This document shows, one piece after another, positions 18,418 to 36,710 of a DNA stretch of 64,000 bases. The DNA lies in the IMG/VR virus record IMGVR_UViG_3300023181_000025, positions 62,001-126,000 of that record. One strand, 5' to 3'. Positions within the stretch are counted from its first letter, which is position 1, and the number at the start of each line of letters is the position of its first letter. The notes beneath the pieces are model-generated. The model saw only the letters and a list, made by a program, of their open reading frames with translations, made no database searches and was not told where the DNA came from. Position numbers and translations under genes: made by a program.

Positions 18418-18489
18418 GCCTTCCTAGCTCAAGTTAGAGCAAGCCCCCGAGGGGGCATAAGGTTTGTGGTTCATGTCCACGGGGAGGCG
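18418..18489 (+). ncRNA. tRNA-like RNA with tetraloop instead of anticodon loop
   Basis: GCCTTCC/GGGAGGC, D-arm GCTC/GAGC, T-arm; GCCCC-CGAG-GGGGC. Confidence 0.7.
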
Positions 18490-18521
18490 CAGAAAATATA
18501 TAAAAATATTATTTTATATAT

Positions 18522-18592
18522 GCCTCAATAATTCAATGGTAGAATTCTAGCTTTGTAATCTAGGAACGAGGGTTCGATTCCCTCTTGAGGCT
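18522..18592 (+). tRNA. tRNA-Thr(TGT)
   Basis: GCCTCAA/TTGAGGC, loop TTTGTAA. Confidence 0.88.
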
Positions 18593-18858
18593 CTTAACTC
18601 TTTAAATATCAACATATTACAACATGATTACATTTTTCCAATTAACATTTGCAGGAATTATTATAATGATGCTGTTTGATATTTTTTGGTTATCAGAATA
18701 TATTTTCAATAAGTCATTTCATAGAGTGGTTTACAATCGTATTTTAAAATTTAATGATAAAGGTTTCTTTGGCCGTTCCCATTCTATTGCATTGTGGACA
18801 TATATTTTGTGCCCGCCGATTTGGATCGCGGCATATTTATTAAATACATATTAAGTTA

Positions 18859-19461
18859 ATGAAAAACATTGCCGTCATAATGACCATGGAAGGCTATAGC
18901 CTTGTCAATTCAGAAGTATTTACTGAAAATAATCCTAATACCCCTGTTTACTATTTGTATGGGGACGCATCCAAAGAAAAAGGCAAAAGAAATATTGATA
19001 GGCTCGTAAAGAAGTGGTGGGAATCCGAAGGTAAAGAATTAGATTTTGAATACGCCTTATTTATGGAATGGGATGTATTGTTTGATGAGAAAATTGAAAA
19101 TATATTTTCAGAAGATTCCGATTTTGAAGTAAAAACTTTAATACAGGATGGGAGTGGCTGGATTGGATTCCGAGACAGAAGAAAAATTTTATCAGAATTT
19201 AAAACTTTAGTAGGAGTTGGCCCGCTTTGTTTGTTTAGAATTAGCCGAAAATGCTTAGAAGTTATTTTTAATCGAAAAAATATTGATGCTTTGTATGCTA
19301 AAGATATGGCGGCGGGCCTTAGATTTGGTTCACTCATTAATAGTTTTAGTTTTCAAATAAAAGAATTGGATAATATTAAAGGTGTTGATTGGGGTGGCGA
19401 AAATAAAGTCGTAAAAGGCAAGGGTGTTTGGCACCCAGTAAAAAATGTAGATTTTAGTTGA
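18859..19461 (+). CDS. putative glycosyltransferase-like protein
   Basis: EWDV motif, C-terminal WHPVK. Confidence 0.4.
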   Translation: MKNIAVIMTMEGYSLVNSEVFTENNPNTPVYYLYGDASKEKGKRNIDRLVKKWWESEGKELDFEYALFMEWDVLFDEKIENIFSEDSDFEVKTLIQDGSGWIGFRDRRKILSEFKTLVGVGPLCLFRISRKCLEVIFNRKNIDALYAKDMAAGLRFGSLINSFSFQIKELDNIKGVDWGGENKVVKGKGVWHPVKNVDFS

Positions 19462-19490
19462 CAATAATCTAAAAATAGTGTAAATTTCAT

Positions 19491-19564
19491 TGCGGGTTAG
19501 ACTGGAGGTGGTTCCAGCCAAGTTTCATAAGCTTAGGAGATCAGTTCGATTCTGATACCCGCAA
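19491..19564 (+). tRNA. tRNA-Met(CAT)
   Basis: TGCGGGT/ACCCGCA, loop TTCATAA. Confidence 0.85.
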
Positions 19565-19637
19565 CTCAAAAACAATTAAAAAGCTAATTGACTGTTAGTA
19601 AATGTATTGTTCTCTTTCGCTAGTCACTAAAGAGTTT

Positions 19638-19708
19638 CGCGCATTCGTCTAATGGTAAGATGCCTCAAAAACATGGGGTGAAAGGTGATTCGATTTCATC
19701 GTGCGCAA
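19638..19708 (+). ncRNA. tRNA-like RNA, 6-nt A-rich loop without U33
   Basis: GCGCAT/GTGCGC, D-arm with TGGTA, TTCGATT; CCTCA-AAAACA-TGGGG. Confidence 0.65.
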
Positions 19709-19714
19709 CATAAT

Positions 19715-19804
19715 TCCCATCGGGCTGGCTAGAGAAGGCTCTCGACTGTTAATCGAGTGGCACCGAATTAAGTAGGTGGCTAGGGGCGGAACCTAGGATG
19801 GGAG
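19715..19804 (+). tRNA. tRNA-Asn(GTT) with long variable arm
   Basis: TCCCATC/GATGGGA, CTCGA-CTGTTAA-TCGAG, atypical T-loop. Confidence 0.75.
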
Positions 19805-19854
19805 CAAATATTTCTTGACTTATCCAATAAATCAGGTAATATACAAAAAGATTA

Positions 19855-19932
19855 GCGGGAATAGCTCAATGTAGAGCGCGACTTGGTTTTAAAAATCCCG
19901 TCGAGGCAGCGGTTCAAACCCGTTTTCCCGCA
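19855..19932 (+). ncRNA. tRNA-like RNA with enlarged anticodon arm
   Basis: GCGGGAA/TTCCCGC, normal D/T arms, CGAC-17 nt-GTCG. Confidence 0.7.
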
Positions 19933-19936
19933 CAAA

Positions 19937-20014
19937 AACTCGGTCGTCTAATAAAAATTAGGGCACCACTCATCGGTAGTGGAAATAAAGGTGAAAGGCC
20001 TTTCCGGGTTGCCA
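19937..20014 (+). tRNA. atypical tRNA-Arg(TCG)-like, CCA encoded
   Basis: AACTCGG/CCGGGTT-G-CCA; CCACT-CATCGGT-AGTGG (A33). Confidence 0.6.
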
Positions 20015-20040
20015 TTTATAATGAATTTATTCATTGTGAC

Positions 20041-20150
20041 GCTGAATGACGGTTCTATTAGATATATTAAAAATAAATTGGCGCTCTGGCCTCTTCGTTT
20101 GCTTACTCATAAAGTATATCTTATACCAGATTCAATATCTGGGTTCAGCA
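20041..20150 (+). ncRNA. tRNA-like RNA with large insert in anticodon arm
   Basis: GCTGAAT/GTTCAGC, T-arm CCAGA-TTCAATA-TCTGG, AGATATA/TATATCT enclosing ~45 nt. Confidence 0.55.
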
Positions 20151-20164
20151 CATTGTAATATAAT

Positions 20165-20236
20165 GGGGGTAGAGCTTGTTAGGAGAAGCACTCGGCTTTT
20201 AACCGATAGAACTGGGTTCGAATCCCAGTGCCCCTA
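20165..20236 (+). tRNA. tRNA-Lys(TTT)
   Basis: loop CTTTTAA, GGTTCGAATCCC. Confidence 0.88.
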
Positions 20237-20251
20237 CATTTAATATTAATA

Positions 20252-20330
20252 GCGAGTATCACATAGAGGTCGATTGTGCCTAACTTCCAATTAGGAATAC
20301 CACGCGTGAGTTCGAATCTCACTACTCGCA
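20252..20330 (+). tRNA. tRNA-Gly(TCC)
   Basis: GCGAGTA/TACTCGC, CCTAA-CTTCCAA-TTAGG. Confidence 0.88.
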
Positions 20331-20549
20331 CATATTTATAATGAAAGAGCCAAATATTATAGTAAGATTGATTCTTTGTTTAATTTCTCCTATAAAATGG
20401 AGAGAAAGGCTGGTTTTAGGCAAGTGTTTTGTTATATTATATAGAGAAAGTAGAAACGATAGTTTGGCCTTCGAGCTAAAAGACAGAATAAATGAGTTGT
20501 GGGAAAAAGAATACGAAAAATGGTGGAAGTTTAAAGCGAAATATTTTTA

Positions 20550-20661
20550 GCCTTCGAAGCAGACGGTTCGATTCCGTCGCCTAGAGATAGGTCCATGGAT
20601 GGTATAAAGCTTACGGTGACATGGTTTGACTCCATATCGGGTTCAATTCCCGACGAAGGCT
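20550..20661 (+). ncRNA. tRNA-like RNA with two T-arm hairpins
   Basis: GCCTTCG/CGAAGGC; GACGG-TTCGATT-CCGTC at D position and TCGGG-TTCAATT-CCCGA at T position. Confidence 0.65.
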
Positions 20662-20669
20662 CAGTAATA

Positions 20670-20761
20670 GGGTAACTAACTCAAGCGGTCTTGAGACTCG
20701 CCTTGAAAGCGATGAGTTCCAGTAAACATTCTGGAATGGGGATCGACACCTCAGTTGCCCG
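20670..20761 (+). tRNA. tRNA-Ser(TGA)
   Basis: loop CTTGAAA, long variable arm, G73. Confidence 0.88.
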
Positions 20762-20862
20762 CTTTTGTGGTTAGGCATTTGTTTCATATTGGTTTGAGGG
20801 TAGTCCCTCCGCAGTCGAAAGCGTTATCATGCCACCTCGCCAATTTATTGGCGAGGGTGAAT

Positions 20863-20947
20863 GGGTTGTAAATCGGACAGGCGTGCCGAGCTTTGTTGCT
20901 AACAAAAGGGACCGGAAACGGTTGGATTTCGAATATTCTGCAACCCG
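20863..20947 (+). tRNA. tRNA-Ser(GCT)
   Basis: loop TTGCTAA, long variable arm ACCG-GAAA-CGGT. Confidence 0.82.
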
Positions 20948-21006
20948 CACGGAAATTTATAAATAAGATTTCCAAAAATTGTCACAGATAAATAAAATAT
21001 TAATTA

Positions 21007-21080
21007 GGGGTCTTAGCTCAATTGGTAGAGCAGTGCGTTTGCAACGCGAAGGTTGTAGGGTTCGAGTCCCTCAGATTCCA
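21007..21080 (+). tRNA. tRNA-Ala(TGC)
   Basis: GGGGTCT start, G3:U70, loop TTTGCAA. Confidence 0.92.
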
Positions 21081-21083
21081 CAT

Positions 21084-21168
21084 GGAGTATTATGTAAACT
21101 GGTGTTTACGGTTGCTTGGAAAGCAACAGGCCGTTAGTTCGGCAAGGGTTCAATTCCTTAATGCTCCG
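21084..21168 (+). tRNA. tRNA-Ser(GGA)
   Basis: GTTGC-TTGGAAA-GCAAC, long variable arm. Confidence 0.88.
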
Positions 21169-21341
21169 CAGAACTAATATTATGAAAACAACTCATCAAT
21201 TCGCCCTCAAGTTAAACGGAAAAAAGCCGGGCCGATAAAATGATTGAATATTTAGATTACTTAATTAAGAGTCAGACAAAAATACCCGTTTCCAATCAAT
21301 GTTTCGCGGTAATAGTTTTTGATAGCATTAAAAATAAATAT

Positions 21342-22118
21342 TTATTTGATTTCCGCTTTTCTAGTGTCTAAACCCTGTTGAAATAGCCTTGATTCAGCCT
21401 CTCGTCTTAACCATAGGCCTTTTAGCTTTTCTCTTGACCACAGCCTTCTCATGCTCAATATGTCACTAGGAACATTTTCCACTTTATCATTAGCGATATT
21501 ATACTTAATCCATCTCATTTCTTTTCGCGAATCCGTATTAGCTAGCGATGGGCCTCGATTAAAAACTAGCGAGGTTAAAGCTCCGTTAGAATGCGGATGC
21601 AATGTTGTGGGGGCAAGAGAGAACGCATCTTTTGTTTGCTTGGTGAAAACCGGCATGGTATAATTAGTAAATACTTTTTCGGCTTGATTGTAATCAAACC
21701 TTAATAAATTTCTAACCTTTGGAAGGCCATTATAATATGCGTTTTTCCCGGTCATTCCAGACACAGACTGCATCAATTGTATTTCTTTTTCTGTTGCTAC
21801 GCCTGTAAAAGCTTTACGTATTTGATCTTTAGTCATCATCCCTAAGTCATTCCCAATGCATACAGTTACTCCCGATGAGGTTGTTTGCCAAGCAGGAACC
21901 GTTGGTCTGGTTAGATACTTGTCATAGTATTCTCTAGTTCCAGATTCATAATAAATTATCAAATCAACGCTTTTTTGAGAAACTGGGAGCGATAAACCTT
22001 CGCTAATAACGTCATTAGGGCCAGCAAATGCCAGCCCCATAAACGCTACTAATAATAGTAATGTTTTTTTAATTAATTTCAAAGTATCCCACATTTTCCA
22101 TTTTGAATTTAGAAGCAC
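21342..22118 (-). CDS. lysozyme-fold endolysin with signal peptide (true start probably ~22071-22094)
   Basis: LIIYYESG, SGVT..IG.DLG, AL.SLVFNRG, GL..RREAE..LF; KKTLLLLVAFMGLAFA. Confidence 0.8.
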   Translation of the reverse strand: MLLNSKWKMWDTLKLIKKTLLLLVAFMGLAFAGPNDVISEGLSLPVSQKSVDLIIYYESGTREYYDKYLTRPTVPAWQTTSSGVTVCIGNDLGMMTKDQIRKAFTGVATEKEIQLMQSVSGMTGKNAYYNGLPKVRNLLRFDYNQAEKVFTNYTMPVFTKQTKDAFSLAPTTLHPHSNGALTSLVFNRGPSLANTDSRKEMRWIKYNIANDKVENVPSDILSMRRLWSREKLKGLWLRREAESRLFQQGLDTRKAEIK

Positions 22119-23007
22119 TATAGTTATTTTTTGTTTTTAGAAGTATTTTCAAACCCTTTCTTTCCCAATACCTTAAATAATTAGAAAGCGTGGAATTTTC
22201 AGGATAATTGCCAAATTTTGCCTTTATAAAAGATTTAACGTTTATTATATAATATAATTTGTTTTCATAGTTTACAACATACCTAGGTCCATATTTGCAT
22301 TTTAACTTTTTTATAGAATTTATTCTTTTTTGCTTTGATTCTTCAGTATGATTTCTGCCATAAAATGGATTATTTTTACCTTCATAAATCCCAAGCTTTT
22401 TTTCGCGCATTATTATTTTGTCTTTTTTTGTATGTTTATAGCCCTTTGCCGGAGGAGTCACTTCCCCGGATTTAATTTTTTCTACATATTTAATTAGACT
22501 TTGTCGGCTTTTTTCTTTTGATTCTGGAGTTATTTTAGATAAATTATTTATGCTGGTCGCTATAGCCTTTTTACTGTTTTCACCGGTGTAAAAAGCTTTG
22601 AGTTTAAGTGATATTTTTTCTTTTGTAGAGACGCTTCTATGCTTTTCGAATAACTTAAAATCAGTTGGATCATTAAGAATATTGAAACCAAAATCTGGGA
22701 AAGAAGATTGGTAGAAATCTATCCAAAATTTTTCCATTTTAAGTAGATTCTCATATGTATAATTTTTTGCCCATTCTAATATTTCGATTATAAATTCTTC
22801 ATGTCCGAATTTATTCCAATAGTTTTGAAGATGTGCGTTGCCATGTAACTTTTTATTTAGTTGCTGAATATGCTCTTTTAACCTCCTAGATACATTAACT
22901 GAACTTCCTATATAAATTTTACCCGTAGGTATATGAGTTATTGAATAAATAGCCTTTTCATTTTTGTTGTATAACCCATAGCTTTTTATTAATTCTGTAG
23001 CTGTCAT
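22069..23007 (-). CDS. GIY-YIG homing endonuclease with NUMOD3-like repeats
   Basis: AIYSI....GKIYIGSS...RRL.EH; GYKHT, NPFYGRNHTEESK. Confidence 0.9.
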   Translation of the reverse strand: MTATELIKSYGLYNKNEKAIYSITHIPTGKIYIGSSVNVSRRLKEHIQQLNKKLHGNAHLQNYWNKFGHEEFIIEILEWAKNYTYENLLKMEKFWIDFYQSSFPDFGFNILNDPTDFKLFEKHRSVSTKEKISLKLKAFYTGENSKKAIATSINNLSKITPESKEKSRQSLIKYVEKIKSGEVTPPAKGYKHTKKDKIIMREKKLGIYEGKNNPFYGRNHTEESKQKRINSIKKLKCKYGPRYVVNYENKLYYIINVKSFIKAKFGNYPENSTLSNYLRYWERKGLKILLKTKNNYSASKFKMENVGYFEIN

Positions 23008-23411
23008 TTAGAAGCAAGAATTATAATAGAAAAAAGAACTAAGAAAAAAGAAAGAGTCCACCTAGTCTTTTCTTTTACGGAAAATTCATCCCAGCCTATG
23101 TTCATCATTGAACCGAAAAATATTCCAATAGTTTTTGGAAACACCACCCTTTTAACAACCCAAACAAGCGCCGACGCCACGGCAACATGAAGAGAAAGAG
23201 AGGCAATATCCACAAGTGTATAAGCTTCAGCAAGCCCAAACGCACCGTCTACCCATTTCGCCAAGAGTAAAACAAGGTAGAAAAATACCACACTCCCACC
23301 GGCGACAGCTAAGTCTTTAACAACCCCGTTTTGTTTCCCCTTTGTTTCAACAGCTACTTCGATCTTTTTTTCGACCTTTGCTTCTTCTTTTTTTTCTTCT
23401 AGAGTTTCCAT
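23004..23411 (-). CDS. membrane protein, holin candidate
   Basis: three hydrophobic segments, upstream of endolysin, preceded by AGTGTAA. Confidence 0.5.
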   Translation of the reverse strand: METLEEKKEEAKVEKKIEVAVETKGKQNGVVKDLAVAGGSVVFFYLVLLLAKWVDGAFGLAEAYTLVDIASLSLHVAVASALVWVVKRVVFPKTIGIFFGSMMNIGWDEFSVKEKTRWTLSFFLVLFSIIILASK

Positions 23412-23471
23412 AGTAAATTTATTTACACTAAAAATCTTGACATACTAGAAAAAGTTGATATATTCTTGCCC

Positions 23472-23831: not shown

Positions 23832-23874
23832 TTACTGGAAACTTTAAAATTTTAGTGTAATATTAGCATACTAT

Positions 23875-23946
23875 GCGGGATTAACTCAGTGGTAGAGTGA
23901 CTCTTTTACAAGGAGTAGGTCGCAGGTTCGAACCCTGCATCTCGCA
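23875..23946 (+). tRNA. tRNA-Val(TAC)
   Basis: ACTCT-TTTACAA-GGAGT, canonical arms. Confidence 0.92.
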
Positions 23947-23951
23947 CATTA

Positions 23952-24022
23952 GGAACGTTTATATATGGGTATTGTAATAGCCTGTCGAGTTAGAGAAAGA
24001 GGTTCGGGTCTCCTACGTTCCG
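23952..24022 (+). tRNA. tRNA-Asp(GTC)
   Basis: GGAACGT/ACGTTCC-G, loop CTGTCGA; weak D and T arms. Confidence 0.7.
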
Positions 24023-24027
24023 CAACA

Positions 24028-24055
24028 AAAAGCCACTAATTACTTGGTGGCTTTT
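24028..24055. terminator. bidirectional intrinsic terminator
   Basis: AAAAGCCAC...GTGGCTTTT between convergent units. Confidence 0.75.
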
Positions 24056-26936: not shown

Positions 26937-27551
26937 ATGAAAGGTAAAATCCTAAAGCTCAATAAATACTATTTCCCCGTTTCAGTTTCTGATTATAAAG
27001 AAATTATAAAAAATATATTTAGCGAGGCAGTATACCCTATTGATATTGTATACGAATTAAACGAAGACGGATCTCCAAATATGGAGGAAATCGCCTATTT
27101 TCAACCAATTAAGACTTGGGATGAATGGTCTAAGTTAGAAATCCGCGATTTCGATGAGTCCATTAAAGGCGTCAAAGGTTCTTATAGAATGCCGTCTGTT
27201 GTAATTTGCGCTGACTACAGCAAGATTAAATGGAACAAAGTGGTCTTTCCGACGAAACAAAATATTTGGCAAAGAGACAACTATATTTGCCAATATACTG
27301 GAAAAAAATTAAATAAAGAAACCGTTACTGTTGACCATATTGTCCCAAAATCAAGGGGCGGAAAAGATTGTTGGTTTAATCTTGTTGCGGCGGACAGAGA
27401 AGTCAATAGGGTTAAAGCCGACAGAACTCCAGAGGAATGCGGACTTAAATTAATTAGACAGCCTTTTATTCCAAAAACAAACGCACTTTCTCTCACTTTT
27501 TTAGAAGCTCGTCCAGAATGGACCAAATTTATTCCAGAAAAAACAATGTAA
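26937..27551 (+). CDS. HNH endonuclease (McrA-like)
   Basis: NI..RD.Y.CQYTG, TVDHIVPKSRGG...W.NLV, N..KADRTPEE. Confidence 0.9.
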   Translation: MKGKILKLNKYYFPVSVSDYKEIIKNIFSEAVYPIDIVYELNEDGSPNMEEIAYFQPIKTWDEWSKLEIRDFDESIKGVKGSYRMPSVVICADYSKIKWNKVVFPTKQNIWQRDNYICQYTGKKLNKETVTVDHIVPKSRGGKDCWFNLVAADREVNRVKADRTPEECGLKLIRQPFIPKTNALSLTFLEARPEWTKFIPEKTM

Positions 27552-29591: not shown

Positions 29592-29671
29592 AAGTTGTTA
29601 ATGAGCTTTCTTGTTTGGAGTAACGCTAGACTATAGGCTTAGAAATTGCGGGTTTGAGTCCCGTCAACTTA
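29592..29671 (+). pseudogene. degenerate tRNA overlapping the end of a 39-aa ORF (29504-29623)
   Basis: AAGTTG/CAACTT, T-arm GCGGG-TTTGAGT-CCCGT. Confidence 0.35.
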
Positions 29672-29677
29672 ACATAA

Positions 29678-29752: not shown

Positions 29753-29838
29753 TAGCTAGTAGCATAAAAGGGTAATGCGACTTACTTCGAAGATCTCGGG
29801 TAAGTGGATGAAGGAATTAATGCTACCTTCCTAGCTTG
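29753..29838 (+). ncRNA. tRNA-like RNA with extended anticodon arm and enlarged T-loop
   Basis: AGCTAG/CTAGCT, GCAT/ATGC, ACTTAC-14 nt-GTAAGT, GAAGG-11 nt-CCTTC. Confidence 0.6.
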
Positions 29839-29898: not shown

Positions 29899-29972
29899 GC
29901 GCCGTTAGCTCAGCGGTTAGAGCGGTCCGACTCTAAATTGGATTGTCGGGGTTTCGAATACCTCACGGCGCA
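29899..29972 (+). tRNA. amber suppressor tRNA (anticodon CTA)
   Basis: GCGCCGT/ACGGCGC, canonical D/T arms, TCCGA-CTCTAAA-TTGGA. Confidence 0.88.
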
Positions 29973-30185
29973 CTTTTGACTTAAAAGAAAACATGGTGAC
30001 TAAATGATTATTGTCATGGTTAAGCTAGAAAATACTGCTAGCAGATTATTTAGAGTGATGCGATAGCTTAGCAAGCTGAGATTATTCAAGGGTTGACAAC
30101 AGTTGCCTGATAATCTCAAATATCTAAAGAAAGTTAAAATATTTTCACTTTTTTCTTCCAAAATCTAAACTTTTAGTGTAAATAT

Positions 30186-30362
30186 ATGAAGCCAAAAATG
30201 ATTACAAGAGTTACAGCAACAGAATTTGAAACCGATGATGGAGTTATCCATGATATTCCGTTTGAATTAGATGAAGTTCCAACAGTTGAGGATTTTCAAC
30301 GAATCTATGACGAATGGTTCAGATTATTTCAACAGAAAGGATTGATAGACAAAAATGGATAA
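30186..30362 (+). CDS. 58-aa acidic protein at IS left end (absent from ORF track)
   Basis: MKPKMITRVTATEFETDDG...; stop overlaps tnpA start. Confidence 0.6.
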   Translation: MKPKMITRVTATEFETDDGVIHDIPFELDEVPTVEDFQRIYDEWFRLFQQKGLIDKNG

Positions 30363-30987
30363 AAAGATTCTATCAATTAGTGATGCTGCATCTATCTTAG
30401 GCGTTTCTGATGAAACTCTTAGAAATTGGGAAAGAGAAGGCAAAGTGATCCCATTTCATACGGAAGGTGGCCATAGACGCTATTATAGAACCGATATTGA
30501 GAAGTTGGCAGGAATCTATGTAGAAACTGTTAAAGAGTCTAGTGGTAAGCGTGTGGGTATCTATTGCCGTGTTAGCTCACATGAGCAGAAGACCAAAGGT
30601 GATTTAGAAAGACAGGTTGGCAGAATGACTACAGAGGCACTAAAACGTGGTTATTCTATTGTTGCGGTTTTTGATGAGGTAGGTTCAGGAATGAACGACA
30701 ATAGGAAGAAATTACAGAAACTTTTTGAATTGGTTGAGAAGAAAGAAATTGATGTAGTCTTAATCGAACATAAAGATAGATTGTCAAGGTTTTGTTTTAA
30801 TTATCTATTATCTTATTTTAATTCCTATGGGGTTAGAATTGAAAAAGTTGAAGAGGTAATGAGTAAGAGTTTCGAGAATGAACTCGTAGAAGATATTTTG
30901 TCTTTGATGGCTAGTTTTTCTGCTAAAATCTATGGACGTAGAAGTTCGCAGAATCGAAAGAAGAAAGAAAAGGAGGAACCAGAATGA
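30355..30987 (+). CDS. tnpA: IS607 serine-recombinase transposase
   Basis: MerR HTH (TLRNWE.EGK, GGHRRY), YCRVSS..QK.DL.RQ, KDRLSRF, ELVED, FSAKIYGRRS. Confidence 0.95.
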   Translation: MDKKILSISDAASILGVSDETLRNWEREGKVIPFHTEGGHRRYYRTDIEKLAGIYVETVKESSGKRVGIYCRVSSHEQKTKGDLERQVGRMTTEALKRGYSIVAVFDEVGSGMNDNRKKLQKLFELVEKKEIDVVLIEHKDRLSRFCFNYLLSYFNSYGVRIEKVEEVMSKSFENELVEDILSLMASFSAKIYGRRSSQNRKKKEKEEPE

Positions 30988-31691
30988 GACAGGAAATTTT
31001 ATATGGCGACTGTTTAGAGCTATTAAAAAACATTCCTGATAAATCAATTGATTTCATTTGTATTGACCCGCCATACGGTTTAACCGCTCCGAAATGGGAT
31101 TCTATTGTTTCTTTTGATTTTTTATGGGCTGAATTTAATAGAATTGGCAAAAATGGATATGTCGCGGCTATATTTGGCTGTCAACCATTCACTACGAAAG
31201 TTATTTGCTCTAATATAGAACAATTTAAATATTGTTGGTATTGGAATAAAAACCAAGGAACAAATTTCTTTCATGCCAAGAGAATGCCAATTAGAAAAGT
31301 TGAAGAAATATCTATTTTTGGCGGCAAAACATATAATCCACAAATTACGGATGGGCATATTCCTACCAATTCTGCTAAAGGCTGCTCCAACGGAAAAGCA
31401 TATCATGGAACCAATACGCGAAATTACGAAGGTGGGAAAACAACGCGATTTCCTGACAATATTTTAAATTTTAAATGCGTGGATAATTATTCGAGAGTTC
31501 ATTCCAGTCAAAAACCAGTTGAGCTTTTGGAGTATCTTATCAATACATATACTAATGAGAATGATGTTGTTTTGGATAGCTTTGCTGGTTCAGGCTCAAC
31601 TTTAGTAGCGGCAAAAAATCTCAATCGTCAATTCATAGGTATCGAAAAAGAAAAAGAATATTATTATATTTGTTTAGAAAGATTGAAATGA
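30984..31691 (+). CDS. N6-adenine/N4-cytosine DNA methyltransferase (beta class)
   Basis: DPPY precedes H..QKP..LL and VLDSFAGSGST. Confidence 0.92.
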   Translation: MRQEILYGDCLELLKNIPDKSIDFICIDPPYGLTAPKWDSIVSFDFLWAEFNRIGKNGYVAAIFGCQPFTTKVICSNIEQFKYCWYWNKNQGTNFFHAKRMPIRKVEEISIFGGKTYNPQITDGHIPTNSAKGCSNGKAYHGTNTRNYEGGKTTRFPDNILNFKCVDNYSRVHSSQKPVELLEYLINTYTNENDVVLDSFAGSGSTLVAAKNLNRQFIGIEKEKEYYYICLERLK

Positions 31692-32908
31692 TTTTACGCG
31701 CATACAAAACCGAGATTAGTGTTAATAACAAGCAACAAACCTTGTTATTGCAACATATCGGTTGTGCAAGATGGGCATATAATTGGGCATTAGCTAAAAA
31801 GAAAGAACAATTCGATAAAAAAGAAAAGATTCCTAATGCTATTGAACTTCATAGGGAATTAAACAAGTTAAAACAGTCGGAAGTTCCTTGGATGTATAAT
31901 TCAAGTAAGACTTCTCCACAAAATGCACTTAGAGATTGCGATAAGGCATTTCAAAATTTTTTCGCTCGTTGTAAGAGAAAAGTCAAAGGCAAGAAAGGAT
32001 TTCCTAAATTTAAATCCAAAAAGAACGAAAAACAGTCGTTTAGATTAGACGGAGCAATTTCAGTAGAGTCTGATTGTATTAAATTGCCACGAATCGGTAA
32101 ACTTAGATTAGCCGAGAAAGATTATATTCCCACTGATTGTAAAATACTATCTGCTACCGTCTCTAAACGAGCGGACAAATGGTTTATATCTATTCAAGTA
32201 GAAACGCCTGACAGAGAGCATCTTGACGCTAAGAACGAGGTAGTAGGAATTGATTTGGGAATTAAAACTTTGGCTACTTGTTCTGATGGAGCCATTTATG
32301 AAAATCCAAAAGCCTTAAAGAAAAATCTTAAAAGACTAAAACGTAAACAAAAACAATTAAGCAGAAAGAACAAGGGAATCAAAAACTATGGAAAAGTAAA
32401 ACAAAAATTAGCAAAATTACATTATCACATATCAAACATTCGTAAAGATTGCTTACATAAAATCACTTCTAAAATTATAGACGAAAACCAAGTCGTAGTT
32501 TTGGAAGATTTGAAAGTAAGCAATATGATGAAAAATCACTGTTTGGCGCAAGCTATCAGTGATGTTGGATTATTTGAATTTCGTCGTCAGATAGAATATA
32601 AAGCAAAATGGAATGGAAGAAAAGTTATCTTCGCGGATACCTTCTTTGCTTCCAGTAAGACTTGTAGCTGTTGCGGATGGAAAAATTCAGATTTGAAGTT
32701 GACAGATAGAATATTTGACTGTAAGATGTGTGATAATAAAATGGATAGAGATTTAAATGCAAGTTTGAATCTAAAACAAATTTATAGGGAAAGTTCTTCC
32801 CGAATTGACGCTTCTGGAGATGGGAGTTCATCAAACGCAAGTTTGGTTAGCCCGTCGTTGAACGAAGAATTTAACAAAAAATCGAGAGTTTATGTCCTAA
32901 AAAGATGA
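31688..32908 (+). CDS. tnpB: RNA-guided endonuclease TnpB
   Basis: RuvC GIDLG / VLEDL / DRDLNA intact; SSKTCSCCG...C..C zinc ribbon. Confidence 0.95.
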   Translation: MILRAYKTEISVNNKQQTLLLQHIGCARWAYNWALAKKKEQFDKKEKIPNAIELHRELNKLKQSEVPWMYNSSKTSPQNALRDCDKAFQNFFARCKRKVKGKKGFPKFKSKKNEKQSFRLDGAISVESDCIKLPRIGKLRLAEKDYIPTDCKILSATVSKRADKWFISIQVETPDREHLDAKNEVVGIDLGIKTLATCSDGAIYENPKALKKNLKRLKRKQKQLSRKNKGIKNYGKVKQKLAKLHYHISNIRKDCLHKITSKIIDENQVVVLEDLKVSNMMKNHCLAQAISDVGLFEFRRQIEYKAKWNGRKVIFADTFFASSKTCSCCGWKNSDLKLTDRIFDCKMCDNKMDRDLNASLNLKQIYRESSSRIDASGDGSSSNASLVSPSLNEEFNKKSRVYVLKR

Positions 32909-33147
32909 CTTTAGATTTTTGTAAGTTTAAAAGAACGGTGTTAAGTAAATTTTCTTGAGAATCGTTTAAGTTAAAATTTTATAAAAACATGAAGAAGAAA
33001 ACGGTAATTATAACTGATCCAAAAGAAATTACCCGCATTTGTTTAAATCAGCCAGCGGTTTCTGGTGAACGAATGAAGCAATCAATAATTTCACAAAACA
33101 AAAAAAATAAAATGAATACACATACGTAGGTTGAATTAAAAGAAGCA

Positions 33148-33681
33148 ATGGCCAATACGAAACAGACTGCAACACAATCTGTTTTAGAGCATGGAGAAAG
33201 TGTTTGGAAATACACCCAAAGAATCTTAAAACAAGATTTCGAAGGGATGAAAATTCCAAATTGGCTAAAAGATAATTTTGGAGAGATTATTAGCAATCTT
33301 CATTATCCAAAAACTATACAGGAGTATAACGAACTTCACGATTGCGGGAAACCGTATTGTCTTGAAGTTGATTCTGATGGCAAGAGGCATTTTCCAAATC
33401 ACGCCGAGGTTTCAAAGCGAGTTTATTTAAACTTGCCGGGAGCTAACAGTATAGTCGGCAACCTAATTGGTTTGGATATGATTTTTCATACATTTACTGC
33501 CGAAGAAATTACGGCGCTCAACCTATCAAAGCGAGACTCTTATACCTTGTTGGTAACAGCCTTGTCAGAAATACACAGTAACGCGGAAATGTTTGGAGGA
33601 ATTGAAAGTGTTTCTTTCAAACAAAAATGGAAAAAGCTTGATCGGCGCGGCAATATGATTATGAAGGGAGGCGCAGAATGA
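33148..33681 (+). CDS. HD-domain phosphohydrolase
   Basis: VLEHG, LHDCGKP, HFPNHAEVS. Confidence 0.7.
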   Translation: MANTKQTATQSVLEHGESVWKYTQRILKQDFEGMKIPNWLKDNFGEIISNLHYPKTIQEYNELHDCGKPYCLEVDSDGKRHFPNHAEVSKRVYLNLPGANSIVGNLIGLDMIFHTFTAEEITALNLSKRDSYTLLVTALSEIHSNAEMFGGIESVSFKQKWKKLDRRGNMIMKGGAE

Positions 33682-33992
33682 AAAGATATATGTATGTTGC
33701 CGTAAGGCAAGATATAAGCGGACCCCAGCAAGTAGTTCAGGCATGTCACGCGGCGATTGAAGCTAGTTGGACATATCATTTTGATGGATTTGAACACCCG
33801 TCTGTGATAGTTTTAGGAATGAAAAGCGAAAAAGATCTTAATAAGTTCACGAAATATCTTGACACTTTGGAGTTTGTCCATTATGACGAATTTCGTGAAC
33901 CGGATAGAGATAATGAACTGACAGCAGTTGCAACTGTTGCTATCGGAGAAGAATATAAACACTTATTTAAAAAATATCAATTGTTAAAGTAA
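33678..33992 (+). CDS. second Pth2-like protein
   Basis: MYVAVRQDIS..QQVVQACHA, FREPD..NELTAVA. Confidence 0.7.
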   Translation: MKRYMYVAVRQDISGPQQVVQACHAAIEASWTYHFDGFEHPSVIVLGMKSEKDLNKFTKYLDTLEFVHYDEFREPDRDNELTAVATVAIGEEYKHLFKKYQLLK

Positions 33993-34053
33993 ATATTTTT
34001 GGTTATTTTGACTTATAAAATGACCGGCCCTAATGAAAAGTTAAGGCGTCAAT

Positions 34054-34125
34054 GCTGCCGTCTTCTACTGGCTAGGAAAGCAGGCTTTCAACCTGAAAAA
34101 GGCGGATCGTAACCGCTCGGCAGCA
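34054..34125 (+). tRNA. tRNA-Glu(TTC)
   Basis: GCTGCCG/CGGCAGC, loop CTTTCAA. Confidence 0.88.
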
Positions 34126-34127
34126 CT

Positions 34128-34199
34128 TTTAATGTAATATAAGATAGCATCCCCTGCAATTGTGGCGGGGTTGTTCTGGTTCAAATCCAGACATTAAAT
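34128..34199 (+). ncRNA. tRNA-like RNA with non-canonical anticodon loop
   Basis: TTTAATG/CATTAAA, TCTGG-TTCAAAT-CCAGA, CCTGC-AATTGTG-GCGGG. Confidence 0.6.
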
Positions 34200-34204
34200 C
34201 ATTA

Positions 34205-34291
34205 GCGTTGGTTGGGGATATTGGTAGTCCTCGCGGAGCTGTAACCTCCGAAACTAATAATTCATTGGACGTTCGATTCGTCTCCAGCGCA
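34205..34291 (+). tRNA. tRNA-Tyr(GTA)
   Basis: CGGAG-CTGTAAC-CTCCG, long variable region. Confidence 0.88.
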
Positions 34292-34294
34292 CTG

Positions 34295-34540
34295 GTAATT
34301 TTAAGGAGGTTGGCTTAGAAGTAGCAATCCTTTAAAAAGTAGAATCTATTCTCCGAATGACCGTAGTAACAACTTGAAGAGAAAATAGAGTTGCGAACGC
34401 TAAACGTAAGCTAGGACTAGGGAGGTAAATCAATATGAGGTTGTAAGAACCTATGAATTGACATAGGCATATCGTGCGGCACTCCGTAATTGGTAAGGCT
34501 GCAAACCGTTCTTTTGGTGTAAAAACATACTTTTAATTAC
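34295..34540 (+). ncRNA. 23S rRNA GTPase-centre (H43/H44, uL11-binding) mimic with ~170-nt insert
   Basis: GGAGGTTGGCTTAGAAGTAGCAATCCTTTAAAAAGT ... GTGTAAAAACATACT, closed by GTAATT/AATTAC. Confidence 0.75.
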
Positions 34541-34572
34541 AAATTGAAACAATAAAATTTATTGTTTCAAAA

Positions 34573-34645
34573 GGCTCGTTGGTGAAATTGGATATCACTC
34601 CAGATTACGACTCTGAGGTTCCTGATTCGAGTTCAGGGCGGGCTA
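34573..34645 (+). tRNA. tRNA-Arg(ACG)
   Basis: loop TTACGAC. Confidence 0.88.
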
Positions 34646-34848
34646 CATGAATAACATTCCAAGAAGAAATGATATGAGCCAATGGGTTGAGGCTGAGGGA
34701 TTGATTTTTGATGCCCTTGTAGGGGTTGAATCTATGGGCGCAGACCCATTGCTGACAGATGCGGTTGTTTTGCTTGAGAAAGCGAGAAGTAAAGTGGCGG
34801 ATTATGTTGACAAGATGAATGAAATATTGTAACTTATAAAGAACATTA

Positions 34849-34922
34849 GCCGTGTTAGCTCAATTGGATAGAGCAGGAGGTTTCTACCCTCAAGGTTATG
34901 GGTTCGAGTCCCTTATGCGGCA
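34849..34922 (+). tRNA. tRNA-Arg(TCT)
   Basis: loop TTTCTAC, canonical arms. Confidence 0.9.
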
Positions 34923-34974
34923 CTTTAAAACATTTTTCTGAGTTCGAATCTCAGGTTGTCTATAGGAATAAAAA

Positions 34975-35256
34975 ATGAAATTACCAGTTCTATATGATGA
35001 GATTCCACCAAAAGAACGGTGGAAAGTTAGAGAAGAATATATCAAAGTTCAAGACGGTCTATGTCAACATTGCAAAAACCCCTTAGTGGGACTAGCTTCG
35101 ACAGAAGTAATGAGTAAAAAAATAAATTTAAACTTATTTCCTGAAGCATTTCTAGATCATCCAATCCATCTTCATCATTGCCATAAAACAGGCTTGACTA
35201 TTGGGGCTGTTCATGCTAGATGTAATGCAGTTTTGTTTCAGTATTATGGAGAATAA
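34975..35256 (+). CDS. endonuclease VII/HNH-like small nuclease
   Basis: Q.GLC.HC, HLHHCH.TG...G.VH.RCN. Confidence 0.7.
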   Translation: MKLPVLYDEIPPKERWKVREEYIKVQDGLCQHCKNPLVGLASTEVMSKKINLNLFPEAFLDHPIHLHHCHKTGLTIGAVHARCNAVLFQYYGE

Positions 35257-35682
35257 AAAAATAGATAACTTTCCTTTTGTTCCTGTTTTCTTTACGGAGG
35301 AAGAGGCAGAATTAGTTGATTGGGATGCAGTTTTTTCTGACGGTTTATTTGATGCACTTCAAACCAACAAAAATTTCAATAAAGATTTTGGAGGCAACTT
35401 TGTTGATAAAAATATGAAAATTTGTGGAAAAATAAGCGCACAAAAGACTAAAAAAAGATTTGAAAAAGGTTAATTACATACAGTGTCATCTCCAGAAGGG
35501 CGATAAACATCACATGGCGTGGATTCCTGAAAAGTTTGCCGTTATTGGAAAATTTATTAAAATTCATGAGGATGATGGTTGGGAAGTAAAAGGTGATGGC
35601 GGCGGAGGCAAAATAACCGCTAAAGAAGCCGATGAACTTTCCCAACTTTATAAGAAAACAAGAAAAGCTTCCGATATTTAAT

Positions 35683-36087
35683 ATGAACGAAAAAACTAAA
35701 CTATATTGCTTTCAAAAGGAAATAGTAGAACTAATAAATTCAAATAAAGACTCCCGAATTTTGGTTCTTATGGCTAGAGGCGGCGGGAAATCATTTTTAT
35801 TTGATTGGCTGACGCCAATAAAGGCAAGGAAGGAAAACGGCATTAGTCGATTTGCAAAATTCAACGGGACAACATTTATTGATGAAGTTGTTGATGAATA
35901 TTTACCTGAGAACCCGGTAGTTGTTTTTTCTTCTTATAGCGAATTATTGGATTATGGAGAATTTGATTTGATAATTAAGTTTGATATTAATAGGATATCA
36001 AGGGAATTATTTAACTTTTACGACAAAGATTTGGTAAAGTTTGTTCCCGAAGATGTTTATAGAAGAGATTTTTTGTGTAGAAAATAA
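35683..36087 (+). CDS. short terminase/SF2-ATPase-like protein
   Basis: LY.FQ.EI, MARGGGKS, FIDE. Confidence 0.45.
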   Translation: MNEKTKLYCFQKEIVELINSNKDSRILVLMARGGGKSFLFDWLTPIKARKENGISRFAKFNGTTFIDEVVDEYLPENPVVVFSSYSELLDYGEFDLIIKFDINRISRELFNFYDKDLVKFVPEDVYRRDFLCRK

Positions 36088-36092
36088 AATTT

Positions 36093-36186
36093 GATATCCA
36101 TTAGTAATAATGCCGAGCGGTGCGGAGGACGCTCTATTGCGTCGGAACCTGAAGAACAATAAACCGGCAAAATCTCAGGGGATATT
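36093..36186 (+). ncRNA. structured RNA with glycine-aptamer-like motifs
   Basis: GATATCC/GGATATT; GCGGAGGA, CCTGAAGAACAA, AAATCTCAGG. Confidence 0.35.
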
Positions 36187-36193
36187 TTTTAAA

Positions 36194-36269
36194 TGTGGAA
36201 TAGCTTAGCCCGGTTAAAGCCCGCGACTGATAATTGCGAGATCGTTCGGTTCAAATCCGACTTCCACAA
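36194..36269 (+). tRNA. tRNA-Ile(GAT)
   Basis: CGCGA-CTGATAA-TTGCG. Confidence 0.88.
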
Positions 36270-36270
36270 C

Positions 36271-36341
36271 TGCCCTTTAGTTTAATGGTAAAACTACACG
36301 TTTTGAGCGTGTCTTTCTCGGTTCGAGTCCGGGCGGGGCTT
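36271..36341 (+). tRNA. tRNA-Gln(TTG)
   Basis: ACACG-TTTTGAG-CGTGT. Confidence 0.88.
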
Positions 36342-36434
36342 CATAAATAAATAACCCGAGCGAGGGCTGATATCCAAGATGCCGAATCTCTACCTGTGCC
36401 AACGGGTAAGTTCTAAATTCAGAATTTATTTATA

Positions 36435-36506
36435 GTTCTTCTCGTCTAAAGCTTAGGACGGCTCCCGCGTCAGGGGGTTATTGTGGCTCGCGCCCACAGA
36501 GGAACG
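36435..36506 (+). ncRNA. tRNA-like RNA with ambiguous anticodon and atypical T-loop
   Basis: GTTCTTC/GAGGAAC, GTCT/GGAC, TGTGG-CTCGCGC-CCACA. Confidence 0.6.
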
Positions 36507-36510
36507 CTTA

Positions 36511-36710
36511 ATGGTGCGGCGCTGAAGGAAGCGCGACGAAGTTTGTAAGTCAGTCATGGAAAGGCGCGCTGGTCATTCAATAATAGAGTTGGGAAACCTT
36601 AATCGGTCTGAAGCCCGAACGCTCCACGTAGCCCATGCGGGGTCGTGTCTAAACCTCATCCGTCAGGATAAGTTACTGACCCCATAGCCGGTATCAAGCC
36701 CGGCCACCAT
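36511..36710 (+). ncRNA. ~200-nt tRNA-like (YrlA-type architecture) RNA
   Basis: ATGGTG/CACCAT, GCGC-TGAAGGAA-GCGC, GTCAGT/ACTGAC enclosing ~120 nt, GCCGG-TATCAAG-CCCGGC. Confidence 0.65.

What the first reader, a model, noticed from the sequence alone, without database searches (positions are those of the whole stretch)
18418..36710. About nine tRNA-shaped RNAs with intact top halves but replaced anticodon arms
Seen: units at 18418, 19638, 19855, 20041, 20550, 29753, 34128, 36435 and 36511 keep a paired acceptor stem and T-arm (usually a D-arm too). Their anticodon arms are a tetraloop, a 6-nt loop, a 14-17-nt extension, a 45-120-nt insert or a loop lacking U33. Damage is concentrated in the decoding arm while stems stay paired, unlike random decay. 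Known: RNase P and CCA enzymes read the top half, whereas anticodon nucleases (PrrC, RloC, VapC, colicin-type) cut the loop. Inference: non-decoding tRNA mimics that act as decoys or inhibitors of tRNA-targeting defences or uncharged-tRNA sensors, or tRNA scaffolds displaying cargo RNA. Together with the rRNA mimic, CCA enzyme, Pth2-like proteins and RNA ligases they may form a translation-mimicry module, the best candidate for an undescribed system here.
Basis: partly seen in the sequence, partly recalled or inferred. Interest (0 to 1): 0.85.

Follow-up and report, generated by a model that had tools for sequence, protein, structure and literature searches.

The report
Non-decoding tRNA look-alikes in phage array
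A giant phage's tRNA gene cluster holds about seven extra tRNA-shaped genes whose anticodon arms cannot read codons; similar elements recur in other phages, so they may be working RNAs rather than dead genes, but this window alone cannot prove it.

Summary
The window comes from a 211-kb uncultivated jumbo phage. It carries 18 canonical tRNAs and at least five divergent decoders (Asn, Asp, three Ser), all on the + strand.

Seven of the nine reported units are real and far above chance: 18418, 19638, 19855, 20041, 20550, 34128 and 36435. Each keeps a 7-bp acceptor stem stacked on a 5-bp T stem. Each has an anticodon arm that cannot decode: a tetraloop, two 6-nt loops, a 9-position helix, a loop with A33/U37, or a 75-80-nt replacement body. 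Unit 29753 is weak and 36511 is unsupported.

No orthologues exist in the searched collections, so covariation could not be tested on these units. Indirect evidence favours maintained structure: all stems are paired, the folds are as stable as or more stable than real tRNAs, and GC reaches 0.60 in a 0.36 genome. T4 rnaC has the same top-half-plus-cargo build. Capped-anticodon cloverleaves recur in unrelated phage contigs, one family with compensatory changes in all four stems.

Against this, the designs are heterogeneous and tRNA fragments lie nearby, so decay remains a serious rival. An anticodon-nuclease decoy role is disfavoured.

The parts
18418..18490 (+). u18418: a perfect cloverleaf whose anticodon arm is a 5-bp GC stem capped by the tetraloop CGAG. 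The D loop is 6 nt (AAGUUA, no GG), the T loop is UUCAUGU (no A58) and the variable region is 8 nt. It starts 6 nt after the CCA-enzyme stop codon.
   Evidence: MFE cloverleaf of -34.8 kcal/mol, z = -4.07. ARAGORN ps85 calls it tRNA-???. A strict cloverleaf descriptor gives 2 hits in 1.68 Mb of shuffled sequence. GC is 0.60. The best resemblance is to tRNA-Arg(CCG) of L033-L035, identity 0.74.
19638..19709 (+). u19638: a cloverleaf with the 6-nt anticodon loop AAAACA. The D loop (AAUGGUA) and T loop (UUCGAUU) are canonical. One acceptor pair is mismatched.
   Evidence: It keeps every tRNA signature except loop length, so it is the unit that most resembles a recent pseudogene.
19855..19933 (+). 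u19855: tRNA-like, with an anticodon helix lengthened to 9 positions (CGAC / UU-CC / GGU) that carries the 7-nt loop UUUAAAA (U33, UAA, A37). The D loop is AAUGUA. It is the only Leu-anticodon element in the array.
   Evidence: Rfam RF00005 scores 49.5 bits. ARAGORN ps85 calls it 'Leu(taa)', 79 nt. z = -2.86. A promoter-like site lies at 19815-19842.
19937..20014 (+).
   Evidence: ARAGORN ps85 calls it 'Arg(tcg)'. z = -1.33.
20041..20150 (+). u20041: acceptor stem GCUGAAU/GUUCAGC and T arm CCAGA-UUCAAUA-UCUGG around an AU-rich body of about 75 nt. There is no D arm.
   Evidence: Top-half scan. MFE z = -2.71. T-arm scan. GC is 0.35.
20550..20661 (+). u20550: a perfect acceptor stem GCCUUCG/CGAAGGC and T arm UCGGG-UUCAAUU-CCCGA around three hairpins. 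One of the hairpins is a second T-arm-like hairpin, GACGG-UUCGAUU-CCGUC. The unit starts at the stop codon of a 69-aa ORF.
   Evidence: (z = -2.88).
29602..29673 (+). A probable tRNA relic. The T arm GCGGG-UUUGAGU-CCCGU is intact, the acceptor has 2 mismatches, and the element overlaps the end of a small ORF.
   Evidence: ARAGORN ps85 calls it 'Tyr(ata)'. z = -1.47.
29753..29838 (+). It is not confirmed as tRNA-like.
   Evidence: No cloverleaf MFE and z = -1.71. ARAGORN makes no call at ps85.
34128..34200 (+). u34128: an AU-rich 7-bp acceptor stem and canonical T arm UCUGG-UUCAAAU-CCAGA. The anticodon loop is AAUUGUG (A33, U37) and the D stem is weak. It lies 1 nt after tRNA-Glu and 4 nt before tRNA-Tyr.
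   Evidence: (z = -2.72).
34938..34954 (+). An orphan T-arm hairpin, CUGAG-UUCGAAU-CUCAG, after tRNA-Arg(UCU). It is a tRNA 3' fragment.
36435..36507 (+). u36435: a perfect cloverleaf with anticodon arm CUCCC-GCGUCA-GGGGG (6-nt loop). The D loop has no GG and the T loop is CUCGCGC.
   Evidence: GC is 0.60.
36511..36712 (+). It is not supported as a tRNA-like RNA.
   Evidence: z = -0.61. ARAGORN calls it only in intron mode at ps85. Rfam has no hit at E <= 10.
17726..18412 (+). A minimal 228-aa CCA-adding enzyme, directly upstream of u18418. It holds the head domain and only part of the RNA-binding region.
   Evidence: Pfam PF01743, E = 9.9e-23. More than 1000 phage or metagenome homologues are listed at 189-246 aa. 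No tRNA or unit in the array encodes CCA.

Best explanation
The core units (18418, 19855, 34128, 36435, 20041, 20550, and less surely 19638) are tRNA-derived genes that have lost decoding. Their fold appears to be maintained.

Proposed course of events:
1. They are transcribed with the neighbouring tRNAs.
2. They are cut out by RNase P and 3' trimming, because the 12-bp acceptor/T-arm stack is intact.
3. They receive CCA from the phage's own minimal CCA-adding enzyme.
4. They accumulate as compact tRNA-shaped RNAs that cannot pair with a codon.

If they act in trans, they would engage proteins that read the acceptor end or T arm, not the anticodon. Units 20041 and 20550 are of the T4 rnaC type, a top half carrying a foreign body.

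What is shown: the sequences, folds, enrichment, strand, tight spacing, absence of encoded CCA, and the adjacent CCA-enzyme gene. What is inferred: transcription, processing, CCA addition, stability and any trans function.
For: - The units are far above chance and strand-specific.
- Stems are 20-21 of 21 paired in the five cloverleaf units. Fold z-scores run from -1.8 to -4.1, against -1.0 to -2.3 for the phage's own tRNAs.
- GC is 0.51-0.60 in 18418, 19855, 20550 and 36435. The genome is 0.36 and the array spacers are 0.15-0.30, so these units have not relaxed toward background composition.
- None is a recent duplicate of another tRNA in the window.
- T4 rnaC, a stable RNA in the T4 tRNA cluster, has the same top-half-plus-body architecture (it is expressed and of unknown function according to PMC9697503).
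- In 11 other phage arrays, sub-threshold tRNA-like calls number 59 on the array strand and 4 on the opposite strand. Calls with odd-length loops number 9 versus 0.
- Searching IMG/VR by D-arm sequence alone gave shortened anticodon arms in 13 of 59 frames with the 6-nt D loop. The control with a GG D loop gave 0 of 112 (Fisher 4e-7).
- One capped family (L207, L252, L310) has compensatory changes in 7 of 22 pairs spread over all four stems.
- A 6-nt-loop family shared by L005 and L010 has 4 of 5 anticodon-stem pairs compensated.
- A 79-nt family has 5 covarying pairs.
Against: - No homologue of any window unit was found: 87 related loci by blastn, a covariance model from the L005/L010 family, and protein searches that show no close relative of this phage. 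Selection on these particular units is therefore untested.
- The stem-integrity argument is weakened by ascertainment. Units with broken stems would not have been noticed.
- The seven units share no common design.
- Relics at 29602 and 34938 show that decay products persist in this array.
- Unit 19638 differs from a good tRNA by essentially one loop nucleotide.
- Elbow nucleotides are missing in four units.
- In the only syntenic relative (L003), no counterpart of u18418 lies between the CCA gene and tRNA-Thr.
Confidence: 0.45

Rival explanations
1. The units are pseudogenes: leftovers of tRNA gene birth and death in an array churned by homing endonucleases and an insertion element. They have no function and simply have not yet been deleted.
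For: - The array shows a continuum from canonical tRNAs, through slightly odd decoders and well-folded non-decoders, to weak elements (19937, 29602, 29753) and a bare T-arm fragment at 34938.
- The lesions are heterogeneous.
- Unit 19638 is one nucleotide away from a normal loop.
- GIY-YIG, HNH and LAGLIDADG endonuclease genes and an IS607-like element lie inside or next to the array. T4 SegB is reported to cut within tRNA genes (PMC8421152). That paper also counts 3 of 26 array tRNAs as pseudogenes.
- No counterpart is found at syntenic sites in L003.
Against: - All stems are paired, yet several independent changes have accumulated in the loops of 18418 and 36435.
- GC of 0.60 persists in an AT-rich genome.
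- The folds are more stable than real tRNAs.
- There are no recent paralogues.
- The same architecture recurs with covariation in other phages. In some contigs it is the only tRNA-like gene in the fetched stretch.
Confidence: 0.35
2. Some units still decode. Unit 19855 would be the phage's tRNA-Leu(UAA) and 34128 a second tRNA-Gln(UUG), both tolerated despite odd anticodon arms.
For: - Once the sub-threshold Asn, Asp and Ser genes are counted, Leu is the only amino acid without a tRNA, and 19855 carries UAA in a U33...A37 loop with an A73 discriminator.
- Rfam scores 19855 as a tRNA at 49.5 bits.
- Short, type-I-shaped 'Leu' tRNAs occur in other arrays.
Against: - A 9-position anticodon helix would put the anticodon about four base pairs too far from the elbow. 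This follows from established tRNA geometry.
- Unit 19855 does not align with the short Leu tRNAs of other arrays and looks more like the Lys/Val type.
- Unit 34128 has A33 and U37 and a weak D stem.
Confidence: 0.12
3. The units are decoys or inhibitors of anticodon nucleases (PrrC, RloC, VapC, colicin-type).
For: - The window encodes two RNA-ligase family proteins and a CCA enzyme, which fits a phage that faces tRNA damage.
- Phage tRNAs are proposed to evade such nucleases through anticodon-loop changes (PMC10264068).
- The loop of 19855 (UUUUAAAA) resembles a tRNA-Lys loop.
Against: - These nucleases recognise the anticodon loop, which is absent, shortened or displaced in the units.
- The published evasion strategy keeps decoding intact, unlike here.
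- No common loop motif is shared by the units.
Confidence: 0.07
4. The units are purely cis-acting punctuation. They are kept only so that RNase P and 3' processing can separate neighbouring tRNAs and small mRNAs in the polycistronic transcripts.
For: - Spacing is tight: 34128 lies 1 nt after tRNA-Glu and 4 nt before tRNA-Tyr.
- Unit 18418 follows the CCA-enzyme ORF by 6 nt, and 20550 starts at an ORF stop codon.
- The acceptor/T stack, the minimal RNase P substrate, is the most constant feature.
Against: - This role does not explain why the D and anticodon stems stay perfectly paired and GC-rich.
- Solitary capped units in other phages have no neighbouring tRNAs to punctuate.
Confidence: 0.15

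Closest known systems
Phage T4 species 1 RNA (rnaC), and rnaD: small stable RNAs in the T4 tRNA cluster
   Same: They lie in the tRNA cluster on the tRNA strand, 1-6 nt from their neighbours, beside a GIY-YIG homing endonuclease gene. rnaC folds as a 7-position acceptor-like stem plus a canonical T arm (CCGGG-UUCGAAU-CCCGG) around a roughly 100-nt non-tRNA body. This is the architecture of u20041 and u20550.
   Different: There is no sequence similarity. The rnaC acceptor has two central U-U mismatches, whereas the window units are fully paired. T4 has no cloverleaf with a capped anticodon arm. The T4 RNAs are shown to be expressed (PMC9697503), and the window units are not.
tRNA pseudogenes and tRNA gene fragments in phage and bacterial tRNA arrays
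   Same: They are sub-threshold or 'undetermined' calls inside arrays with altered anticodon loops. Fragments are present alongside them (PMC8421152).
   Different: The core units keep all stems paired, stay GC-rich, and fold better than the real tRNAs.
Bacillus cereus tRNA-Other (a functional pseudo-tRNA) and other non-translating tRNAs
   Same: It is a tRNA-shaped RNA that does not work in translation yet has a cellular role (PMC3399842).
   Different: It is chromosomal and a single gene, and it still has a 7-nt anticodon loop. No homology was tested.
tRNA-like domains of tmRNA and YrlA (bacterial Y RNA)
   Same: They have an acceptor/T-arm top half without a decoding anticodon arm and are processed by tRNA enzymes (PMC3985003).
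   Different: The ARAGORN tmRNA search and the Rfam tmRNA and Y-RNA models give no hit in the window. The units lack G3-U70, a tag reading frame and a Ro-binding stem.
Phage tRNAs with anticodon-loop mutations that evade host tRNases
   Same: They are phage-encoded and their changes concentrate in the anticodon loop (PMC10264068).
   Different: Those tRNAs keep a 7-nt loop and still decode. The units here cannot.
Engineered tRNA scaffolds, and viral tRNA-like leaders such as the MHV68 tRNA-miRNA RNAs (comparison made from general knowledge)
   Same: A tRNA top half is used to obtain processing and stability for an inserted RNA.
   Different: Those are synthetic or eukaryotic-viral systems. No cargo function is known here.

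Membership tests
Canonical decoding tRNA | A 5-bp anticodon stem with a 7-nt loop, U33 and a purine at position 37 | tested here: not met
   18418 has a tetraloop. 19638 and 36435 have 6-nt loops. 34128 has A33 and U37. 19855 has a 9-position helix. 20041 and 20550 have no anticodon arm.
Canonical decoding tRNA | Detection by ARAGORN at default settings, or by Rfam RF00005 at the gathering score | tested here: not met
   ARAGORN at default calls none of the units. Only 19855 passes RF00005, at 49.5 bits.
Canonical decoding tRNA | Elbow nucleotides G18, G19, T54, Psi55, C56 and A58 | tested here: inconclusive
   GG is absent in 18418, 19855, 34128 and 36435. A58 is absent in 18418 and 36435, and T54 in 36435. 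However, 27 apparently normal phage tRNAs carry the same GG-less 6-nt D loop.
Minimal substrate for RNase P or the CCA-adding enzyme (acceptor/T-arm minihelix) | A 7-bp acceptor stem directly stacked on a 5-bp T stem with a 7-nt loop, plus a discriminator base | tested here: met
   Met by 18418, 19855, 20041, 20550, 34128 and 36435. Unit 19638 has 6 of 7 acceptor pairs. Actual cleavage or CCA addition is not testable with these tools.
T4 rnaC-type top-half RNA | Location in the tRNA cluster on the tRNA strand, next to a tRNA | tested here: met
T4 rnaC-type top-half RNA | An acceptor-like closing stem and a canonical T arm around a long non-tRNA body | tested here: met
   Met by u20041 and u20550, compared with rnaC.
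T4 rnaC-type top-half RNA | Sequence homology to rnaC or rnaD, or the CGRUU/UUYCG acceptor motif | tested here: not met
   blastn gives only chance-level matches. The motif scan finds nothing in the window.
T4 rnaC-type top-half RNA | Accumulation as a stable processed RNA during infection | not testable with these tools
   The phage is uncultivated and no transcript data are available.
tmRNA | ARAGORN or Rfam RF00023 detection, G3-U70, and a tag reading frame | tested here: not met
   ARAGORN calls no tmRNA. The only RF00023 match at E <= 10 is a 12-bit hit on tRNA-Met, with none on any unit. No unit has G3-U70 (sequences).
Capped-anticodon cloverleaf class seen in other phage contigs (not a named family) | Four paired stems, a 6-nt GG-less D loop, and an anticodon stem closed by a 4-6-nt loop | tested here: met
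   u18418 meets all three features. u36435 has an 8-nt D loop. Comparators are L207, L252, L310, L307, L240, L189 and L299. Homology is not shown; the resemblance is structural only.
tRNA pseudogene | Substitutions that break stems as often as they change loops, with composition drifting to the genome background | tested here: not met
   Not met by the core units. Met or nearly met by 29602, 19937 and 34938. This test is biased, because the units were found through their stems.

The most novel reading that the evidence does not exclude
Large phages carry an undescribed class of non-decoding cloverleaf RNAs with capped or replaced anticodon arms and often a GG-less 6-nt D loop. They would be matured and CCA-tailed like tRNAs by a phage-encoded minimal CCA enzyme. 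They would act in trans on proteins that read the tRNA acceptor end, for example host toxins that modify or cut the 3' end, or tRNA processing and charging enzymes. The window's units 18418 and 36435 would be members of this class.
Probability: 0.2. Interest if true: 0.8.

Novelty: new variant of a known kind. Interest (0 to 1): 0.55.

Why it matters
Phage tRNA clusters are usually read as codon-supply or anti-defence kits, and odd members are dismissed as pseudogenes. The only classical examples of non-tRNA RNAs in such clusters, T4 rnaC and rnaD, still have no known function after fifty years. If the capped and cargo-bearing units are maintained RNAs, they widen that puzzle into a class that can be studied by comparative genomics and simple biochemistry (RNase P, CCA addition, charging, toxin protection). 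They may also point to a way phages interfere with proteins that handle tRNA ends. If they are relics, they document rapid tRNA gene turnover in arrays rich in homing endonucleases.

Tried and rejected
- Orthologue search. The CCA enzyme as a query in IMG/VR found only the source contig. The array protein 18859-19461 has one 48% relative, on a 1.5-kb contig. The best CCA-enzyme relative is 63% identical. GenBank phages have nothing close.
- blastn of all units against 87 related loci matched only tRNA-Ser(GGA).
- A covariance model from the L005/L010 6-nt-loop family picks up ordinary tRNAs but not u36435 or u18418.
- Rfam at E <= 10 gives no family for any unit except tRNA for 19855.
- The tmRNA reading of 36511 was rejected.
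- The intron reading of 20550, 36511 and 34128 was rejected. ARAGORN's intron mode also fires in ORFs, and bacterial tRNA introns are large group I introns (general knowledge).
- Recent intragenomic duplication was rejected.
- 'Loss of G18G19 marks non-decoders' was rejected after 27 normal-looking phage tRNAs were found with the same D loop.
- Promoter and terminator scans are not above shuffled expectation overall.
- PDB sequence searches of four neighbouring unknown proteins gave nothing useful.
- The XacN1 homologue of 33148-33681 is not in a tRNA array.

Full report
**Source and setting.** The window matches IMGVR_UViG_3300023181_000025, a 211-kb viral contig. ARAGORN finds 18 tRNAs between 16560 and 36342, all on the + strand. 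They are interspersed with small ORFs and several notable genes:
- a 228-aa CCA-adding enzyme (17726-18412);
- GIY-YIG, HNH and LAGLIDADG homing endonucleases;
- an IS607-like element (resolvase, methylase, TnpB);
- a weak Pth2-like protein and a Nudix protein;
- further downstream, two RNA-ligase family proteins and a NADAR protein.

The minimum-energy folds of 18418, 19638, 19855, 34128 and 36435 are cloverleaves. Units 20041 and 20550 fold as an acceptor stem plus T arm around a large body. Unit 19855 has a 9-position helix (4 bp, a UU/CC internal loop, 3 bp) that ends in a normal-looking loop, UUUAAAA. Unit 29753 does not fold as a tRNA and is never called. Unit 36511 has a tRNA-like frame but z = -0.61, and it is called only in an intron mode that also fires inside ORFs. 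So seven of nine units stand.

**What else is in the array.** Five sub-threshold elements look like working decoders: Asn(GUU) at 19715, Ser(UGA) at 20670, Ser(GCU) at 20863, Ser(GGA) at 21083 and Asp(GUC) at 23952. They supply exactly the amino acids missing from the default set, which leaves only Leu. The only Leu-anticodon element is u19855.

There are also weaker elements (19937, 29602) and a bare T-arm fragment at 34938. The array therefore shows a continuum from canonical genes to fragments.

**How intact is the top half?** The acceptor/T stack of 12 bp is intact in six units and is 11 bp in 19638. Elbow nucleotides are not uniformly kept. G18G19 are absent in 18418, 19855, 34128 and 36435. 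A58 is absent in 18418 and 36435, and T54 in 36435.

I first took this as damage. A search of IMG/VR with only the D-arm sequences of u18418 and u19855 changed that view. It returned 59 distinct tRNA-like frames, and 27 of them have normal anticodon loops (Asp, His, Trp, Met, Thr, Ile). The 6-nt GG-less D loop is therefore a normal trait of many phage tRNAs.

**Tests of decay versus maintenance within the window.**
- The units are not recent copies of other tRNAs in the window.
- Stems are 20-21 of 21 paired.
- Fold z-scores (-1.8 to -4.1) equal or exceed those of the phage's real tRNAs (-1.0 to -2.3).
- GC is 0.60 in 18418 and 36435 and 0.51-0.53 in 19855 and 20550. The genome is 0.36 and the spacers are 0.15-0.30.

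These points argue against long neutral decay. They are weakened by ascertainment, since elements with broken stems would not have been seen. Recent origin would also explain the composition.

**Comparative evidence.** No orthologues exist in the collections searched. The nearest CCA enzyme is 63% identical. An array protein has a single 48% relative. blastn and a covariance model find no counterpart of any unit. In the one syntenic fragment (L003), the spacer between the CCA gene and tRNA-Thr holds no tRNA-like fold. However, even the shared tRNAs are only 63-71% identical at that distance.

- In 11 other arrays, sub-threshold calls are 59 on the array strand and 4 opposite. Odd-loop calls are 9 versus 0.
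- L005 and L010 share a 6-nt-loop cloverleaf in which 4 of 5 anticodon-stem pairs are compensated.
- A 79-nt family in six loci has five covarying pairs and a conserved non-tRNA core.
- An acceptor/D/T scaffold (AGUCAGG...CCUGACUAC) recurs 2-4 times per array in L058, L067, L070 and L072, with 40-90-nt variable inserts.
- Among D-arm-ascertained frames, anticodon arms shorter than normal occur in 13 of 59 with the 6-nt D loop. The GG-type D-arm control gives 0 of 112 (Fisher 4e-7).
- One capped family (L207, L252, L310) shows compensatory changes in 7 of 22 pairs across all four stems.
- Several capped units are the only tRNA-like gene in the fetched stretch.

**Known precedent.** In T4, rnaD and rnaC follow tRNA-Arg by 1 and 6 nt, beside the GIY-YIG gene segB. 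rnaC folds as a 7-position acceptor-like stem and a canonical T arm around a roughly 100-nt body, with z = -4.57. It is expressed late and its function is still unknown (PMC9697503). Units 20041 and 20550 share this build but have no sequence similarity to it.

**Mechanism.** My best reading, at 0.45 confidence, is that the core units are maintained, non-decoding tRNA derivatives. They would be released and CCA-tailed like tRNAs and would be able to engage only those proteins that read the acceptor/T end. The phage CCA enzyme has a head domain and only part of the usual RNA-binding region. By inference, that could make it indifferent to the tRNA elbow.

Plain pseudogenes remain a strong rival at 0.35. 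The designs are heterogeneous, relics are present, and 19638 is one nucleotide from normal. Decoding by 19855 or 34128 is possible but geometrically unlikely. A decoy role against anticodon nucleases is disfavoured, because those enzymes read the loop that is missing. The published phage strategy keeps decoding intact (PMC10264068). A purely cis punctuation role explains the acceptor/T stack but not the other paired stems.

**Verdict.** The non-decoding inference is supported. The decoy and 'module' claims are unproven. The units are best filed as a new variant of a known but unexplained kind, namely tRNA-cluster tRNA-like RNAs and pseudo-tRNAs. Interest is moderate to high, mainly because the same architecture turns out to be widespread in phage contigs.

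Noticed in passing
window 19715-19805; L005:837-929, L010:7722-7810, L043:3062-3148: A tRNA with a GUU (Asn) anticodon but a long, type-II-style variable arm recurs in four phage arrays. The loop CUGUUAA is invariant and the anticodon stem covaries. Its charging identity (Asn or Ser/Leu-like) is an open question.
   Followed up: partly
window 20670-20762, 20863-20948, 21083-21169, 23952-24023: These look like working tRNA-Ser(UGA), Ser(GCU), Ser(GGA) and Asp(GUC) genes that ARAGORN misses at default settings. Counting them and the Asn element, the array covers every amino acid except Leu.
   Followed up: partly
window 29899-29973: An amber-suppressor-type tRNA (anticodon CUA), which ARAGORN labels 'Pyl'. 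ORFs in the window are not visibly interrupted by TAG, so its role is unclear.
   Followed up: no
window 30355-32908: An IS607-like element sits inside the tRNA region: a serine resolvase with a MerR-type HTH (30355-30987), a DNA methylase (30984-31691) and a TnpB/OrfB_IS605 protein (31670-32908). A guide-like RNA would be expected near its 3' end.
   Followed up: no
window 22069-23007 (-), 26937-27551 (+), 38167-39162 (-), 54415-54918 (+): Four homing-endonuclease-type genes (GIY-YIG, HNH, LAGLIDADG, HNH-AP2) lie in or near the tRNA array. This mirrors segB in the T4 tRNA cluster.
   Followed up: partly
window 17726-18412: The CCA-adding enzyme is only 228 aa. More than 1000 phage or metagenome homologues are listed at 189-246 aa (all but one within 222-246 aa), so this is a distinct minimal form that appears to lack most of the body and tail regions of cellular enzymes.
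   Followed up: partly
L058:6120-9277, L067:406-1278, L070:6639-9277, L072:680-3318: A repeated tRNA-like scaffold occurs 2-4 times per array with different 40-90-nt inserts between its halves. The constant parts are AGUCAGG-UG-GCGGAAUGGUAGACGC at the 5' side and ACAGGUUCGAAUCCUGU-CCUGACU-ACA at the 3' side. The same acceptor sequence also appears on capped units in L207, L252, L270 and L307.
   Followed up: partly
L005:3804-3877, L010:8879-8949; L089:1909-2047 (T4 rnaC): The L005/L010 6-nt-loop cloverleaf has two central U-U mismatches in its acceptor stem (CGG-UU-GK / MC-UU-CCG). T4 rnaC has the same pattern (CGA-UU-CG / CG-UU-UCG). This may be a shared recognition motif.
   Followed up: partly
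L010:11909-12243, L043:1293-1680, L043:3622-4026: Related phage arrays carry tmRNA genes, and one carries a GOLLD RNA. The window has neither.
   Followed up: no
window 34293-34572 and 36343-36434: These are unassigned intergenic stretches inside the array (280 and 92 nt, GC 0.35-0.38) with no ORF and no Rfam match. They could hold further RNAs or fully decayed tRNA genes.
   Followed up: no
control loci L316, L351, L383, L389, L423, L315: Several otherwise normal phage tRNAs (Ile GAU, Asn GUU, Trp CCA) have C33 instead of the near-universal U33. This fits reports of anticodon-loop variation in phage tRNAs.
   Followed up: no
window 55444-56475, 57927-59279, 40252-40839, 15688-16188: Two RNA-ligase family proteins, a NADAR-domain protein and a Nudix hydrolase accompany the array. 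This fits an RNA and tRNA repair or detoxification toolkit.
   Followed up: no
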